From assembly GCF_001194135.2 (NCBI RefSeq), contig NC_068989.1, positions 19,552,412 to 19,616,411 on the forward strand: DNA of 64,000 nucleotides, in the 5' to 3' direction. Of the stretch, positions 28,180 to 37,430 are shown one piece after another. Under the pieces are notes generated by a model. The model had not been told where the DNA came from. It did not search any database and saw nothing but the letters and a program-made list of their open reading frames with translations. Numbering within the stretch: position 1 is the first letter of the stretch; each line of letters starts with the position of its first letter. A program made the translations under genes and the position numbers. This DNA comes from Octopus bimaculoides. Its lineage: Eukaryota.

Positions 28180-28189
28180 TCAATAATTT
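28180..28189 (-). CDS. RPS21: 40S ribosomal protein S21, last coding exon ((K)NY*)
   Basis: ttttttttcttttctttcag|A AAT TAT TGA completes the 83-aa protein [83 protein letters not shown]. Confidence 0.9.
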
Positions 28190-29031
28190 CTGAAAGAAAA
28201 AGAAAAAAAATTCTCATAAAACTGCAATAGGTATTGAAATTAAGTTTTGAAAGACATGTAATATAATAGAAAATTAAATTCTATAAAGTTAAAATATTTC
28301 AATGTATTTGAATCAAGTTCCCACCGCATTTACTATTAATTAATGCATTAGTGTAAGTATGGCTGCATGGTTAAGAAATTTGCAAGCACATAGTTCCGGT
28401 TTCAATCCTACTGATTAAGGTGAAATCTTCTAGCAATGCCCTGGGTTGACCAATTGCCACTGCACCCTACTGAAATTTAGTAGATAGAAATTGCAGAAGC
28501 CTGTTGCAAATAAATTAATATAATATACAAAGGCCACTTATTTCCACCACCAAAAGTGCTAATTATCAATGAATGCCCTGCTGGAAACCAATATAACTAA
28601 TAATATTGTGCACTAAACAATTCTTCTAAAAATAAATATTTTTAGAGTTAAGCATGTCTTTATATATGTATATCTTTATTCTTTACTTCTTTCAGTCATA
28701 CTGGGGCACCATCTTGAAGGGGTTTTAGTTGAATGAATTGACCACAATACTGAATCTTTTTTTTCTTATAAGCCTGGGATTTATTCCATCGGTCCCTCAT
28801 GTTGAACTGCTAAGTTACAGAGACATAAAGCAAACCAGTACCAATTGTCAAGTGGAAGTGAGAGGACAAACATGATAGGCTTCTTTTAGTCTCATCCACT
28901 CTGAAGGATTTGATTTACCTGGGGCTATAGAAGAAGCCACATGAACCTGGAACCACGTAGAAAGGAAGCAAACTCTGACCACACAACCACCAAAAATACC
29001 AAGTCCAAACTAACAAACTTTCACAACTTAC

Positions 29032-29087
29032 TTTGCAATAATTCCATCCCTTTTTGCTAAACGGCAAATACTGTCATCAGATTCACC
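29032..29087 (-). CDS. RPS21: RPS21 coding exon 4 ([18 protein letters not shown])
   Basis: ctttacag| and |gtaagt; 56 nt; matches the conserved eS21 C-terminal part. Confidence 0.97.
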
Positions 29088-29319
29088 CTGTAAAGTGAGG
29101 AGAAAGGAGAAATAAATTAATGAAAAGGCACTGAAAAGAAATGAACAAATGTTACTATGAATCTAAGGCTGCATCTCCCTAAATATGAGGAACTTACTGA
29201 AGATGAAGTTAATTCAAAATATATTAGAACCAAATCTGACAAACCTTTCATTTTGTAAAATTCTATATTTCAGTACCACCAATTAATAGTGATGCACACC
29301 ATTATCTATGCAATGAAAA

Positions 29320-29447
29320 GAATGTCAGAGGTGCTTGTCCAGACAATTTTATATGGAAAATTATCTGAAAGTTTTCCTCTTTTTATTTTCCAAAGTTTTG
29401 GCCCCAGTCACAAAAATGAAGCATGAACAGGAATTTGATGACTTTGG
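29320..29447 (-). ncRNA. Box H/ACA snoRNA, copy A (predicted guides 18S U1238 and U36, human numbering)
   Basis: Two hairpins (CCAAAG/CUUUGG and AGAGG/CCUCU), H box AAAUAA and ACA 3 nt from the end. Pockets UCAAAUU+GCC and AAAACUUU+GACAAGCA, each 14 nt from its box. Confidence 0.88.
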
Positions 29448-29558
29448 CTTTATATACAAATAAAGATAGAATCACAACAGACTTCCTATATAATCTAGCA
29501 ATTTTCCAATATTAACATTATAATAATGAGCCAAGTTGAAATATATCAAGGGTATTAC

Positions 29559-29630
29559 CATCTGTCGAATCTTCCCGCAAATAGCATATGTTTTGTTTGA
29601 ACCTGTCATTCTGCCTGTAGTAACATCAAC
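29559..29630 (-). CDS. RPS21: RPS21 coding exon 3 ([24 protein letters not shown])
   Basis: ttttctcag| and |gtaata; 72 nt; matches eS21. Confidence 0.97.
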
Positions 29631-29765
29631 CTGAGAAAAGGGAGAAAGACTAGAAATAAAATCACATAAAAACCACATTCAATTCTGATGTGTGTGTGTG
29701 TATGCAAGCCATTTTAACTTGCAACACAAACTGCCAAAAGATAAAAAAACAAACAATATGGAAAC

Positions 29766-29895
29766 TAATGTCAGAGGTGCTTGTCCAGATAATTTTACGA
29801 GTAAAAAATTAGCTGAAAGTTTTCCTCAATTTATATCCCAAAGACTAGGCTCTGTACACAGGGGTACTATGTGAACAGGAATTTGACAACTTTGG
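29766..29895 (-). ncRNA. Box H/ACA snoRNA, copy B (paralog of 29320-29447)
   Basis: Same pockets (GUCAAAUU+GCC; AAAACUUU+GACAAGCA), H box AUAUAA and ACA box. Upper stems and loops have diverged while pairing is kept. Confidence 0.9.
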
Positions 29896-34491: not shown

Positions 34492-34620
34492 AGATGTATG
34501 AACCAGTTGAATATTCAGAAGATTAGAAATCTGAGATACATTTTCAACAGTTCAACATTTTATATACCAAAGTTTTGACTCCACTCACAGGTTTTTACCA
34601 TGAGTCGCAACACCCTTTGG
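34492..34620 (-). ncRNA. SNORA13: Box H/ACA snoRNA, SNORA13/snR35-like (predicted guide for 18S U1248), copy 1
   Basis: The 5' hairpin pocket GUGUU + GUCAAA pairs with 18S UUUGAC-U-C-AACAC, 14 nt from H box AUAUAA. The second hairpin (UGAAC/GUUCA) is followed by ACA. Confidence 0.88.
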
Positions 34621-34709
34621 AAAATGATCACCATAACTCCAATATCGAAATATGCTAACATTATNNNNNNNNNNNNNNNNNNNNNNNNNNNNNNNNNNNN
34701 NNNNNNNNN

Positions 34710-34890
34710 TTCTTCGCCACATCACCAAATGAAATATGCTTATTGGTCGTTGCACCAGAAAATAACGGGGTAATCTTTTGGAATACGTCTTATTATTATC
34801 GTCATTTTCCGTGAGCACGTCTTTTTAATTGTAAACACTCCCGTTCTGTTTGACGTGTGGAAGAGGACGCTAATGGGTGTGTGTGTGCGA
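34710..34890. repeat. Unclassified CpG-rich repeat, copy 1 (related copies at ~35290-35450 and ~38399-38501)
   Basis: Shared strings ttcttcgccacat(c/t)accaaat.aaatatgcttatt.gtcgttgcaccagaaaataacggg and cgtcattttccgtgagcacgt. Confidence 0.8.
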
Positions 34891-35784
34891 GTTGGTTTTA
34901 TGTAACCATTTCTTTAAGTGTTATTCTTTTACTTGTTTCAATCATTTGACTGCGGCCATGTTGGAGCACTGCCTTTAGTCGAAAACATCGACCCCAGGAC
35001 TTATTCTATCGATCTCTTTGCCGATTCGCTAAGTTAAGGGGACGTAAACACACCAACATCGATTGTCAAGCGATGGTGGCGGGACAAACAGATACATATA
35101 AAACGGGCTTCTTTCAGTTTCCGCCAACCAAATCCACACACAAGTTTTAATTGACCGACTTTTTTTCCATGCATGCTGCAATATTTCGGCTCTTCGGTCA
35201 TTAACAAAAAACCCCACATGGCTTTTTCGACGTTTATCTCGTTTTCTTCCTGGAAATTTACGGATTTTACATACAGAAATAAAGCAGGTAAGAACAAATA
35301 TGGGCAATCTTTCGGAATACATCTCATTAACTTCGTCATTTTCCGTGAGCACGTTGACTTGTCAATTGTAAACATTCGTGTGCGTGCTTATTCTTGTTTG
35401 ACGTGTTAAAGTGGAAGAGGAAGCTAATGGGTGTACGTGTGTGTGTGGAGGAAGCTAATAAGTGTACATATTCCGGTCCTTTCCTCAGAATCATAGAAGT
35501 GGCATTAACAATTTCGATAATAATACAAGGGACGTAACTCTTAAAACAATAAGGAAGATAATATCGCCAAGAAAAATCACACAAAATCAAAATGTTAGAA
35601 TTCAAGAGAATTCGTATTAGAATTTTGAAAGTGTGTTTCTAGCATCTCAGGTTTTCTGTTTAGATACTTTTTGCGTCTGTTATTGTGTAATGCTATACGT
35701 GCGTGAAACATTAGTAGAGTAAACACTTTTAATTTCACTTCTTGTCAAATGATGACTGTGGTACGAAGCTATTATATAAAGTGT

Positions 35785-35912
35785 AAATGTGTGAACCAGC
35801 AGAATAATCAGAACGTTGGAATTCTGAGATTGTTTTCAGCAGTTCAACATTTTCTGTACCAAAGTTTTGACTCCACTCACAGGTTTTTACCATGAGTCGC
35901 AACACCCTTTGG
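35785..35912 (-). ncRNA. SNORA13: Box H/ACA snoRNA, SNORA13/snR35-like, copy 2
   Basis: 5' hairpin identical to copy 1, H box ACAGAA, and a diverged but still paired 3' hairpin ending GUUCA-C-ACA-UUU. Confidence 0.88.
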
Positions 35913-37213
35913 AAAACAATCACGAGGAAACAAAAGCGGCAGTACATCGAACTAGCTGTGCTATATACCTAATCAACCTAATTTTCGTTTTAACGTCCAC
36001 TTTCCATGCCATATTTTTTTACGACCAGATGCCCTCGCCAATCCTCACCTATTCCCAATTTAGGTATTTTCGGTCTACCATATTTTCTCATTGAAGTTTG
36101 GAAACGGAGGGTACGACTCCCATGACGTCCCCCCCCCCACCATTTTAAGGTCCGCCTGAGACTAGGGTGAAAGATACTCGCAGCAGGTGCCACGCAGTAG
36201 GACTGAAACCGAAACCACACAGCCTCTCTAGTTAAAACTAATTTTGTATCTTCTCATTACAGTAAATGTTTTGCTTTGAAGAATAACGATATCTAAAAAT
36301 ATGCAAACTTGTCTCCTGCGTGTTTTGAATTCAGGCCTGTTCCAATCGAGCAAACCTATGTGATTAAAGACCTTATTTTTTCAATATTACAGATATCTAC
36401 TACTACTTTATACAAGTTTTATTTGTATTTAAAATGGTAGGGTGTGATTTGGGTACTATTTTTAGCAGATCTAGAGACCACACTTACAGGTCTCGGGGTG
36501 TGTCATCGCTGCTTTCTGAAGAAAAGTATGAAGTGAGAGTAACTAGGGATCGAAAATTGTATGTGGAATAAAACCGAGCATTCCTGATGTGAAAGGGATA
36601 AAAGAATTAAGAGCAAAGTGATCATATTTTGACGCTTATTCAGTCGCCTTGTACATGAATGAAATAAATGTTTCTACTTTAAGGCACAAGGCCTGAAATT
36701 TTGGGGGAGGGGGCCATTCGATTACATCGACTCCAGTGCGAAACTGGTACTTGATTTATCGACTCCAGCGGCATTTGAACTCAGAACGTAAAGACAGATG
36801 AAATACCGATATGCATTTCGCCCGGCGTGCTAATGATTCTGCCAGTTCGCCGCAGAATGAAATAAGGGTAAGATAAAAACAAAAACACGAATAAAAATTG
36901 CAAATCTTCGTTTCTACATGAATGACAAACTTTCCCGAGAAAAATAAATAGGATATGGTAACTTTTATGCTAGTTACAAAAAAAAAAAGTTAAAGAGCTT
37001 ATGAAAAGCCTTAGCGATCTTTCGTTTAGAGAACCTTAAATTTAGGATTGTAAATGAAAGGAAACTAAGCCAAAAACGTAGTACAAGATCTCCCGTGTAT
37101 AATACAGGACTATTACAAGATACACACCAGAGGTATATAATAAAGTAGGCAAAAATAATTTCAAAATATAATTGAGAAAAAGAAAACGTGTAAACCACGT
37201 GTGTGGAGCATAC

Positions 37214-37263
37214 CATTTCCTTGGGATATACATATCCACGAATTCACCTGCTTCGTTCTGCAT
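37214..37263 (-). CDS. RPS21: RPS21 coding exon 1 ([16 protein letters not shown]); the exon begins at 37291 with 5' UTR
   Basis: Canonical eS21 N-terminus; acceptor tttactattgcag| and donor TG|gtatgc; 50 coding nt. Confidence 0.98.
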
Positions 37264-37397
37264 AATCCTTTCTTTATTCTAAGAAAATCTTCTGCAATAG
37301 TAAAGAAACAAAATGCGAGACTTAACAAATCATTGTACATTTAAAACCCTCAGTAATTCCATTATTAGTTTTAAGAAGAATCACACCAACAACTTAC

Positions 37398-37430
37398 AGT
37401 TAAAATGGACGACCGTGAAAAGGAAGAGGA
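37398..37430 (-). promoter_or_regulatory. RPS21: RPS21 TCT/5'-TOP start and non-coding exon 1
   Basis: TCCTCTTCCTTTTC pyrimidine tract with a TCT-motif match (TC-C+1-TTTTC, C at 37422), followed by donor |gtaagt at 37397. Confidence 0.8.

What the first reader, a model, noticed from the sequence alone, without database searches (positions are those of the whole stretch)
28180..37430. RPS21 is a multi-snoRNA host: four intronic H/ACA RNAs whose guides converge on one 18S segment
Seen: two pairs of duplicated ~130-nt segments in introns 2, 3 and 4. All are sense to RPS21, each has a hairpin-H-hairpin-ACA layout, and each guide pocket is 14 nt from its box. Established: the human guides for these sites sit in other hosts (SNORA13 in EPB41L4A-AS1, SNORA5 in TBRG4, SNORA55 in PABPC4, SNORA69 in RPL39). 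I know of no snoRNA in human RPS21. Inference: a lineage-specific arrangement co-expressing a small-subunit protein with guides for U1238 and U1248 (18S GCGGCUUAAUUUGACUCAACAC) and U36.
Basis: partly seen in the sequence, partly recalled or inferred. Interest (0 to 1): 0.8.

Follow-up and report, generated by a model that had tools for sequence, protein, structure and literature searches.

The report
Four H/ACA snoRNAs in octopus RPS21
Three introns of the octopus ribosomal-protein gene RPS21 carry four previously unlisted small guide RNAs predicted to direct pseudouridine formation at three conserved 18S rRNA sites; this is a sound new annotation of an ordinary kind of arrangement.

Summary
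RPS21 lies on the minus strand (6 exons, 83 aa, 100% identical to annotated Octopus eS21). Its introns 2, 3 and 4 hold two pairs of ~131-nt sense-strand units: A1/A2 and B1/B2. Each has a hairpin, H box, hairpin and ACA layout.

The A 5' pocket matches 18S U1248 (human numbering; the SNORA13/snR35 site). The B 5' pocket matches U1238 (the snR85 site). The B 3' pocket matches U36 (the SNORA55/69 site). In each case the guide starts 14 nt before its box.

All four units are present in the gap-free O. sinensis and O. vulgaris assemblies. They are about 96% identical there against about 91% for surrounding intron, and the A 5' hairpin is invariant. Both assembly gaps are intronic and harmless; the larger one sits in a species-specific TTAA-flanked transposon.

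Rfam finds nothing at gathering score, only weak hits to SNORA13, TtnuHACA21 and snR85. RPS21 loci of six other lophotrochozoans lack these units.

Expression, real RNA ends and the species' own 18S were not testable. The verdict is new members of a known kind, of modest interest. Two side points stand out: two snoRNAs share one intron, and the A and B 5' hairpins may be related.

The parts
28145..37429 (-). RPS21 (eS21) host gene. Exons: 37429-37398 (5'UTR, begins with the pyrimidine run CCTCTTCC), 37291-37214 (ATG at 37263), 34331-34268, 29630-29559, 29087-29032, and 28189 to about 28145 (stop codon 28183-28181).
   Evidence: Read from the sequence with GT/AG borders. The spliced product is 83 aa and 100% identical to Octopus 40S ribosomal protein S21, Pfam PF01249.
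35785..35915 (-). A1, an H/ACA snoRNA candidate in intron 2, 1,452 nt upstream of exon 3. 5' guide arm GUGUU 35905-35901; 3' guide arm GUCAAA 35871-35866; H box ACAGAA 35857-35852; ACA 35790-35788.
   Evidence: The minimum-energy fold is two hairpins, z -2.96. The pocket fits 18S UUUGAC-U1248-C-AACAC, 14 nt from the H box. Weak Rfam hits: TtnuHACA21 25 bits, SNORA13 19.9 bits. Orthologues in L002 and L003 are 96% identical, with the 5' hairpin invariant.
34492..34623 (-). A2, an H/ACA snoRNA candidate in the same intron 2, 159 nt upstream of exon 3. 5' guide arm 34613-34609; 3' guide arm 34579-34574; H box AUAUAA 34565-34560; ACA 34497-34495.
   Evidence: Two-hairpin minimum-energy fold, z -4.25. 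It has the same U1248 pocket as A1. There is a compensatory U-A to C-G change in the lower stem of the 3' hairpin, and a 3-nt deletion confined to its loop in O. sinensis and O. vulgaris.
29766..29898 (-). B1, an H/ACA snoRNA candidate in intron 3, 134 nt upstream of exon 4. 5' pocket arms GUCAAAUU 29887-29880 and GCC 29850-29848; H box AUAUAA 29836-29831. 3' pocket arms CUUU 29819-29816 and GACAAGCA 29785-29778; ACA 29771-29769.
   Evidence: The 5' pocket fits GGC-U1238-U-AAUUUGAC (8+3 bp). The 3' pocket fits UGCUUGUC-U36-C-AAAG (8+4 bp). Both start 14 nt from their box, and both are the best-scoring target in 12 of 12 rDNA units. The 5' hairpin alone folds canonically. It is 95.5-96.2% identical in L002 and L003.
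29320..29450 (-). B2, an H/ACA snoRNA candidate in intron 4, 231 nt upstream of exon 5. 5' pocket arms UCAAAUU 29438-29432 and GCC 29402-29400; H box AAAUAA 29388-29383. 3' pocket arms CUUU 29371-29368 and GACAAGCA 29339-29332; ACA 29325-29323.
   Evidence: Same pockets as B1 (7+3 bp for U1238 in this species, 8+3 bp in the other two; 8+4 bp for U36). Weak Rfam hit to snR85, 17.9 bits. The 3' hairpin has a perfect 10-bp upper stem. The 5' hairpin alone prefers another fold.
34665..34709 (.). Assembly gap in intron 2, between A1 and A2.
   Evidence: The flanks are collinear with L002 and L003, where about 73 nt occupy this place and no further snoRNA copy is present.
30541..31970 (.). Insertion found only in this species, with TTAA-flanked 16-nt terminal inverted repeats. 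It contains the 762-N gap (30890-31651). It is not part of the snoRNA system.
   Evidence: Inverted repeat I2, 100% complementary. O. sinensis and O. vulgaris have only about 34 nt between the same flanks.

Best explanation
Octopus RPS21 is a host gene for four intron-encoded box H/ACA snoRNAs of two families.

Inferred from the established H/ACA pathway: they are transcribed as part of the RPS21 pre-mRNA. Each unit would be bound co-transcriptionally by dyskerin, NHP2, NOP10 and NAF1/GAR1, then released from the spliced and debranched intron by exonucleolytic trimming to an RNA of about 130 nt ending 3 nt after ACA.

Shown by complementarity and spacing:
- Family A (A1, A2) uses its 5' pocket to place 18S U1248 (human numbering; yeast U1191) for pseudouridylation. 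This is the first step towards the conserved m1acp3-pseudouridine at the tip of helix 31. The A 3' hairpin appears to be structural only.
- Family B (B1, B2) is a double guide. Its 5' pocket targets U1238 (yeast U1181), 10 nt upstream in the same rRNA stretch. Its 3' pocket targets U36.

Inferred: placing these guides in a gene whose first exon begins with a pyrimidine run (TOP-like) couples their supply to small-subunit protein synthesis. The duplicates in the same or adjacent introns arose by local duplication before the split of O. bimaculoides from O. vulgaris and O. sinensis.
For: Gene model and sense orientation.

Architecture and boxes are conserved in all 12 copies from three species. 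The named structure is kept in 99.4% (A) and 93.8% (B) of cells, against at most 51% when partners are slid. It shows one compensatory pair and six wobble-preserving changes.

Fold z-scores are -2.96, -4.25, -1.69 and -2.94.

Constraint: the snoRNA units are about 96% identical between species against 91.3% for aligned intron, and they carry few indels. The 64-nt A 5' hairpin shows no change in six copies, while the A 3' pocket and the flanks diverge. The similarity between paralogues stops at the unit borders.

Targets: the guide arms start 14 nt from the box. U36 and U1238 are the best-scoring sites in 12 of 12 eukaryotic rDNA units. U1248 is in the top three in 12 of 12 and has the better duplex energy.

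Pairing exceeds the experimental minimum of 8 bp. The B 5' pocket mirrors yeast snR85, which pairs 8+4 bp from its own 5' pocket (PMC6049503).

Sub-threshold Rfam hits go to the expected families, with the guide motifs aligned: SNORA13, TtnuHACA21 and snoR03 for A, and snR85 for B.
Against: There are no expression data, so the stable RNAs and their ends are inferred.

The species' own 18S and 28S were not available. Targets were tested on 12 unidentified eukaryotic rDNA units from metagenomes and on segments known to be universal.

No Rfam family reaches its gathering score.

The three species are close, so covariation is thin: one compensatory pair.

The 3' arm for U1238 is only 3 bp. A register that targets U1239 scores the same for B1 (7+4 against 8+3 bp) and slightly lower for B2.

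[quoted passage not shown] That pocket can also pair with an LSU site through G.U pairs.

In O. bimaculoides, the B2 5' hairpin alone prefers a fold that hides the guide. The canonical B folds are not the unconstrained minimum-energy fold of the full units.

A1 lies 1.45 kb from the 3' splice site and shares its intron with A2. This departs from the usual one-snoRNA-per-intron layout.
Confidence: 0.8

Rival explanations
1. Only some of the four units are productive. One copy of each pair, most likely A1 or the 5' pocket of B2, would be a decaying or redundant duplicate that is not processed or does not guide.
For: A1 lies 1,452-1,899 nt from the 3' splice site, while A2, B1 and B2 lie 131-366 nt from theirs. 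Two snoRNAs in one intron cannot both be released by simple exonucleolytic trimming. O. bimaculoides B2 lost one guide pair (7+3 bp), and its 5' hairpin prefers another fold. The upper stem of the B1 3' hairpin has a mismatch.
Against: The 5' hairpin of A1 is as invariant as that of A2 in all three species. All boxes and pockets are intact in all 12 copies. Each unit shows the same reduced divergence, about 96%.
Confidence: 0.25
2. The A 5' pocket has a different or additional substrate: a large-subunit rRNA uridine in the conserved stretch AUUUUGAUU-U-UCAGUAC.
For: In 8 of 12 rDNA units this LSU site scores equal to or above U1248 in a simple pair count (8+6 bp including three G.U). The implied distance to the box is 15 nt.
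Against: Summed arm energy is weaker, -4.8 against -6.8 kcal/mol. The same pocket motif GUGUUGC...GGAGUCAAA recurs in the consensus of TtnuHACA21 and, less fully, in those of SNORA13 and snoR03, in the alignments returned for A1. The octopus LSU sequence is unknown.
Confidence: 0.1
3. The units are not RNAs at all. They would be conserved intronic sequence with some other role, or hairpins and motifs that match by chance, or products of mis-assembly around the gaps.
For: Single guide-plus-box matches occur by chance at 0.15-0.5 per 63 kb. There are no expression data. Rfam gathering scores are not reached.
Against: Two pockets plus H and ACA fall in register within one 131-nt unit, four times over. 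All are kept in two gap-free assemblies. Substitutions and indels avoid the pockets, boxes and stems. The chance hits elsewhere lack a second hairpin or lie in repeats.
Confidence: 0.03

Closest known systems
SNORA13 (human, Rfam RF00396), snR35 (yeast) and TtnuHACA21 (Tetrahymena)
   Same: The guide aims at the helix-31 uridine that becomes m1acp3-pseudouridine (human 1248, yeast 1191). The pocket motif GUGUUGC...GGAGUCAAA is shared with the TtnuHACA21 consensus and partly with the SNORA13 consensus. The RNA is a two-hairpin H/ACA of about 130 nt encoded in an intron.
   Different: It scores only 19.9 bits against a gathering score of 53 for SNORA13, and 25 against 100 for TtnuHACA21. The host is a ribosomal-protein gene, not the lncRNA EPB41L4A-AS1. 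There are two copies in one intron. The 3' hairpin is unconserved.
snR85 (yeast, RF01240) and vertebrate SNORA5
   Same: The 5' pocket is aimed at the UU dinucleotide equivalent to yeast U1181/U1182 (human 1238/1239). It has the same 8-bp 5' arm, GUCAAAUU, and a short 3' arm beginning GCC. Yeast pairs 8+4 bp; octopus pairs 8+3 bp.
   Different: It scores only 17.9 bits against a gathering score of 37. The second hairpin carries a U36 guide. The host gene differs: SNORA5A/C lie in TBRG4 in human.
SNORA55 and SNORA69 (vertebrates)
   Same: The guide targets 18S U36.
   Different: There is no detectable sequence similarity (no Rfam hit at E up to 10). Here the U36 guide is combined with a U1238 guide in one RNA, which is the kind of reshuffling of antisense elements described for vertebrate snoRNA families (PMC6984369).
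Multi-snoRNA ribosomal-protein host genes and intronic H/ACA clusters (human, Drosophila, sponges)
   Same: Several snoRNAs lie in the introns of one ribosomal-protein gene, with paralogues in neighbouring introns. The set of snoRNAs differs between orthologous genes of different lineages (PMC2246290, PMC3412847).
   Different: To my knowledge RPS21 has not been reported as a snoRNA host; a literature search found no such report. Cephalopod snoRNAs are essentially unannotated.
sno-lncRNAs, for example human sno-lnc5AC from SNORA5A and SNORA5C in a TBRG4 intron
   Same: Two H/ACA snoRNA genes lie within one intron, which is the stated prerequisite for a snoRNA-ended lncRNA (PMC4234469).
   Different: No evidence exists here that the 1.4-1.7 kb between and including A1 and A2 accumulates as an RNA. 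The internal sequence is repeat-rich and no better conserved than the rest of the intron.

Membership tests
Box H/ACA snoRNA (general class) | Hairpin, hinge, hairpin, tail secondary structure | tested here: met
   The named structure is kept in 99.4% (A) and 93.8% (B) of cells, against at most 51% when slid. The minimum-energy fold of A1 and A2 reproduces it. For B the 3' hairpin is reproduced, and the B1 5' hairpin folds canonically on its own.
Box H/ACA snoRNA (general class) | H box (ANANNA) in the hinge, and an ACA box 3 nt from the 3' end | tested here: inconclusive
   ANANNA (ACAGAA, AUAUAA, AAAUAA, AGAUAA) and ACA are present and conserved in all 12 copies. The true 3' end cannot be read from DNA.
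Box H/ACA snoRNA (general class) | Pseudouridylation pocket with two arms pairing either side of an unpaired U-N, 14-16 nt upstream of the box, with at least 8 bp in total | tested here: met
   A 5' pocket 6+5 bp. B 5' pocket 8+3 bp (7+3 in O. bimaculoides B2). B 3' pocket 8+4 bp. All start 14 nt from the box. The 8-bp minimum is from PMC6049503.
Box H/ACA snoRNA (general class) | Accumulates as a stable RNA of about 130 nt bound by dyskerin, NHP2, NOP10 and GAR1 | not testable with these tools
   No RNA-seq or protein-binding data were available.
SNORA13 / snR35 family (RF00396) | Reaches the Rfam gathering score | tested here: not met
   19.9 bits against 53, E 0.17 in a 161-nt search. Nothing was reported in gathering mode.
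SNORA13 / snR35 family (RF00396) | Guides the helix-31 uridine (human U1248, yeast U1191) | tested here: met
   The pocket pairs UUUGAC-U-C-AACAC. It is in the top three in 12 of 12 rDNA units and has the best duplex energy. This is complementarity only; the modification itself was not tested.
snR85 family (RF01240) | Reaches the Rfam gathering score | tested here: not met
   17.9 bits against 37, E 0.67 in a 606-nt search.
snR85 family (RF01240) | 5' pocket guiding yeast U1181 (human U1238) | tested here: met
   GGC-U-U-AAUUUGAC is the best target in 12 of 12 rDNA units for B1 and in 10 of 12 for B2 (tied in L029, second in L118). For B1 the U1239 register ties.
SNORA55 / SNORA69 | Sequence or structure similarity to the family model | tested here: not met
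   Neither family appears at E up to 10 in a 606-nt search.
SNORA55 / SNORA69 | Guides 18S U36 | tested here: met
   UGCUUGUC-U-C-AAAG is the best target in 12 of 12 rDNA units.
sno-lncRNA | Two snoRNA genes within one intron | tested here: met
   A1 and A2 both lie between exons 2 and 3 in all three species.
sno-lncRNA | Accumulation of the inter-snoRNA RNA with snoRNA ends and no poly(A) tail | not testable with these tools
   No transcript data were available.

The most novel reading that the evidence does not exclude
A1 and A2 sit in one intron in all three Octopus species. Trimming of the excised intron could therefore stop at the two snoRNPs and leave an H/ACA-capped sno-lncRNA of about 1.4-1.7 kb made from a ribosomal-protein gene. 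This would be a first for a mollusc.

A second, compatible reading concerns origin. The 5' hairpins of families A and B are homologous: the B model hits A at 31-33 bits, and they share the same lower stem, 3' pocket frame and H region. One guide would then have been made from the other by local duplication and a few substitutions, moving the target by 10 nt within the same rRNA stretch.
Probability: 0.25. Interest if true: 0.45.

Novelty: new member of a known kind. Interest (0 to 1): 0.27.

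Why it matters
The result gives cephalopod genome annotation four snoRNA genes that the standard Rfam-based route misses. It also assigns likely guides to three conserved 18S pseudouridines, including the first step of the m1acp3-pseudouridine at the ribosomal P site.

It is a clean example of two known patterns. The guide-target relationship is conserved from yeast to molluscs, while the host gene, the copy number and the pairing of guides within one RNA are reshuffled.

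The covariance models built here (R1, R2) and the pocket motifs can be used to trace these guides through molluscs. Beyond that it does not change how snoRNAs are understood.

Tried and rejected
- **Rfam, gathering mode.** The window and five related loci gave nothing. E-value mode gave only sub-threshold hits.
- **Other lophotrochozoan RPS21 loci.** Models R1 and R2, with filters off, found no credible match in Babylonia, Aplysia, Pecten, Liolophura, Lingula (two loci) or Crassostrea. The best was an 18.7-bit, 70-nt partial hit outside the gene. Strict and relaxed target-driven scans of the same loci also found nothing credible.
- **Extra scanner hits, rejected.** Window 55874 (+) and 50123 (-) are single hairpins without a second hairpin. 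L003 12647 lies in a SINE-like repeat present in several copies.
- **A 'fifth copy'.** The segment at 30687-30732 reported by the repeat finder (63% identity) lies inside the species-specific transposon and was not picked up by R1 or R2. I treat it as chance.
- **Other cephalopods.** No squid or Nautilus RPS21 appeared among the best 120 protein hits. The Logan contig behind P0003 is an intronless cDNA-like sequence.
- **A first crude identity profile** was confused by paralogue mapping. A MAFFT alignment replaced it.
- **A target for the A 3' hairpins.** No site recurs across rDNA units with more than about 8.5 points, and the pocket itself varies by indels between species.
- **tRNA scan of the window:** none found.

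Full report
**Origin of the window and the gene model**

On the minus strand, 37429-28145 reads as a six-exon gene with canonical GT/AG borders. The spliced product is 83 aa: [83 protein letters not shown]. It is 100% identical to the protein annotated as 40S ribosomal protein S21 of Octopus (P0001).

That protein is encoded at three chromosome-scale loci: GCA_001194135.2 (L001), GCA_006345805.1 (L002) and GCA_951406725.2 (L003). From my own knowledge of the accessions these are O. bimaculoides, O. sinensis and O. vulgaris. L001 matches all four query units at 100% with the same spacing, and it holds 807 N, the sum of the two gaps. L002 and L003 contain no N.

**The gaps**

Both gaps are intronic, and the exons on either side are collinear and complete. 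Reading frame is therefore not in question.

Gap 34665-34709 lies in intron 2 between the two A units. Its flanks align to O. vulgaris on either side of about 73 nt.

Gap 30890-31651 lies in intron 3, inside a 1.43-kb stretch with no counterpart in the other two species. This stretch is bounded by perfect 16-nt inverted repeats, TTAACCCTTTCGTTAC and GTAACGAAAGGGTTAA. It looks like a piggyBac-like non-autonomous transposon.

The two gap-free species hold exactly two A and two B units. The duplications are real, and there is no sign of a hidden extra copy.

**The observation**

The repeat finder and BLAST confirm two pairs of units:

| Unit | Window coordinates (minus strand) | Intron | Distance from unit end to next exon |
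|---|---|---|---|
| A1 | 35915-35785 | 2 | 1,452 nt |
| A2 | 34623-34492 | 2 | 159 nt |
| B1 | 29898-29766 | 3 | 134 nt |
| B2 | 29450-29320 | 4 | 231 nt |

A1 and A2 are 88% identical overall and 100% identical over the first 58 columns, up to the H box. B1 and B2 are 77% identical. Similarity between paralogues stops within about 15 nt of the unit borders.

Each unit reads as follows: 6-bp lower stem, internal loop, upper stem, ANANNA, second hairpin with internal loop, ACA.

**Structure**

The hand-drawn H/ACA structure is kept in 99.4% (A) and 93.8% (B) of sequence-by-pair cells. When the 3' partners are slid, at most 51% pair.

Variation is scarce because the species are close:
- One compensatory U-A to C-G change and one G-C to G.U change occur in the lower stem of the A2 3' hairpin.
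- A 3-nt deletion in A2 of O. sinensis and O. vulgaris falls in a loop.

Unconstrained folding reproduces both hairpins for A1 and A2 (z -2.96 and -4.25) and the 3' hairpin for B1 and B2. The B1 5' hairpin alone folds canonically. The B2 5' hairpin of this species prefers a fold that pairs the guide with the upper-stem strand.

No UGAG (CAB box) sits in any terminal loop, read directly from the sequences. That argues for nucleolar rather than Cajal-body RNAs.

**Constraint**

In a three-species MAFFT alignment of the whole gene:

| Region | Identity, O. bimaculoides vs the other two |
|---|---|
| Aligned intron outside the units | 91.1-91.5%, with about 2,700 gapped columns |
| The four units | 95.5-96.2% |
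| Exons | 98.2-100% |

The changes inside the units avoid the three target-matching pockets, the boxes and the lower stems. There is one exception: a CA-for-UG change in O. bimaculoides B2, which shortens one guide arm by one pair. By contrast, the 3' pocket of family A varies by substitutions and indels.

**Targets**

I applied the standard H/ACA rule: target = reverse complement of the 3' arm, then U-N, then the reverse complement of the 5' arm.

| Pocket | Pairs with | Base pairs |
|---|---|---|
| A 5' pocket | UUUGAC-U-C-AACAC | 6+5 |
| B 5' pocket | GGC-U-U-AAUUUGAC | 8+3 |
| B 3' pocket | UGCUUGUC-U-C-AAAG | 8+4 |

In human 18S numbering these are U1248, U1238 and U36. The numbering and the universality of the two segments rest on my own knowledge. 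In each case the first guide nucleotide lies 14 nt before the H or ACA box.

A snoGPS-like scanner with structural filters recovers the units in the window and in the two other species. In block-shuffled windows it finds 0.15, 0.5 and 0.45 hits per 63 kb for the three sites.

I also scanned every U of 12 complete eukaryotic rDNA units fetched from metagenomes:
- The U36 site is the best target of the B 3' pocket in 12 of 12.
- The U1238 site is the best target of the B1 5' pocket in 12 of 12 and of the B2 5' pocket in 10 of 12 (tied in L029, second in L118). For B1 the register that would modify U1239 ties.
- The U1248 site is among the top three for the A 5' pocket in 12 of 12.
- A G.U-rich LSU site (AUUUUGAUU-U-UCAGUAC) counts as many or more pairs in 8 of 12. 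Its summed arm energy is weaker, -4.8 against -6.8 kcal/mol.
- The A 3' pockets have no recurrent target.

Experimental work sets the minimum at 8 bp, evenly or unevenly split. [quoted passage not shown] It also describes the yeast snR85 5' pocket as pairing 8+4 bp around U1181-U1182 (PMC6049503). The octopus B 5' pocket is the same design.

**Relation to known families**

Rfam reports nothing at gathering scores. In E-value mode on short stretches, the results were:
- A1 gives TtnuHACA21 (25 bits, E 0.018), SNORA13 (19.9 bits, gathering score 53), snoR03 and SNORA41.
- B2 gives snR85 (17.9 bits, gathering score 37).

In these alignments the shared letters are mainly the guide arms: GUGUUGC...GGAGUCAAA for A, and UCAAAUUCC...GCC for B.

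These units therefore work like SNORA13/snR35 and snR85, and for U36 like SNORA55/69. By the families' own thresholds they are not demonstrable members. Homology beyond the guide cannot be shown with three close species.

Literature confirms several points:
- snR35 makes Psi1191, the first step to m1acp3-Psi, and the same hypermodified base is found at human 1248 (PMC4872110).
- SNORA13 is produced from an EPB41L4A-AS1 intron (PMC12975130).
- SNORA5A and SNORA5C lie in TBRG4 (PMC4234469).
- SNORA55 targets 18S-36 in mammals, birds and reptiles (PMC6984369).
- SNORA69 targets 18S U36 (PMC11001866).

**Is the arrangement lineage-specific?**

I fetched RPS21 loci of Babylonia areolata, Aplysia californica, Pecten maximus, Liolophura sinensis, Lingula anatina (two loci) and Crassostrea virginica. 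Four searches found no counterpart: Rfam in gathering mode on the first four of these loci, the two covariance models with filters off on all seven, and strict and relaxed target-driven scans on all seven.

Squid, cuttlefish, Nautilus and other octopod loci could not be obtained. The only other cephalopod-like hit was an intronless transcript. The arrangement is therefore shared by three Octopus species and absent from the sampled non-cephalopod lophotrochozoans. Its age within cephalopods is unknown.

**Context and novelty**

Ribosomal-protein genes are classic snoRNA hosts. The introns of 27 Drosophila cytoplasmic ribosomal-protein genes host snoRNA genes (PMC2246290), and 57 snoRNAs lie in 28 human ribosomal-protein genes (PMC3412847). 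In sponges, snoRNAs are duplicated in neighbouring introns, and the snoRNA sets differ between orthologous ribosomal-protein genes (PMC3412847). Antisense elements are shuffled among snoRNA families, and targets switch by point mutation (PMC6984369).

A search for RPS21 as a snoRNA host found no report. The finding is a new member of a known kind.

**Two details worth a follow-up**

First, A1 and A2 share one intron in all three species, spanning 1,424, 1,614 and 1,709 nt from A1 start to A2 end. This is unusual for animals, and it is the stated prerequisite for a sno-lncRNA (PMC4234469).

Second, the B-family model hits the A-family 5' hairpins at 27-33 bits, above all background hits, which reach at most 20 bits. 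The two share an identical lower stem, CCAAAG/CUUUGG. They also share a similar 3' pocket frame, GAG(C/U)C.A..CUUUGG, and a similar H region. The two families may therefore share an origin, with the target moved 10 nt along the same rRNA stretch. Alternatively, partial gene conversion may have occurred between co-hosted genes. Neither reading can be settled here.

**Verdict**

The mechanism (intron-derived H/ACA guides for 18S U1248, U1238 and U36) rests on architecture, spacing, complementarity and constraint. It does not yet rest on RNA or modification data. Confidence is 0.8 and interest is modest.

Noticed in passing
window 30541-31970: A ~1.43-kb insertion in RPS21 intron 3, absent from O. 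sinensis and O. vulgaris. It is bounded by perfect 16-nt inverted repeats that include TTAA (TTAACCCTTTCGTTAC), like a piggyBac-type non-autonomous element. The 762-N assembly gap lies inside it.
   Followed up: partly
window 889-1428 (-): A 179-aa open reading frame with the HTH domain of Mos1/mariner transposases (PF17906, E 4e-17). It is a transposon remnant far from the finding.
   Followed up: partly
window 35915-34492 (-); L002 11359-12972; L003 11424-13132: Two H/ACA units share a single intron in all three Octopus species. This departs from the usual one-snoRNA-per-intron layout and is the prerequisite for a snoRNA-ended lncRNA.
   Followed up: partly
window 35915-35831 and 34623-34527 against 29898-29766 and 29450-29320 (-): The covariance model of family B matches the 5' hairpins of family A at 27-33 bits. 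They have an identical lower stem and a similar 3' pocket frame and H region. This suggests a common origin with retargeting from one helix-31 uridine to the other.
   Followed up: partly
window 29450-29389 (-) and 29814-29787 (-): There are signs of division of labour between B1 and B2. The O. bimaculoides B2 5' hairpin lost one guide pair and prefers a fold that hides the guide. The upper stem of the B1 3' hairpin carries a mismatch, while that of B2 is perfect.
   Followed up: partly
window 34710-34820, 35291-35354, 38398-38491: Interspersed SINE-like repeats (81-90% identical copies) lie in and upstream of intron 2. One copy in O. vulgaris (around L003 12647) gave a false guide-scan hit.
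   Followed up: partly
L002 24767-28299 and L003 21061-28286 (+); L003 9030-9374 (-): In the sister species the next gene downstream of RPS21 encodes a nucleoside-diphosphate-kinase-domain protein. A short Pif1-like helicase fragment lies just upstream in O. vulgaris.
   Followed up: no
window 30008-30078 (+): A TG/CA-rich hairpin scores 27 bits against mir-297 (gathering score 90). It is low-complexity sequence and most likely meaningless.
   Followed up: no
window near 8860-9170, 52700-52900, 53530-54030 and 59560-59780: Further runs of N are flanked by TA/TG/CA microsatellites. They were seen only as X runs in the ORF list.
   Followed up: no
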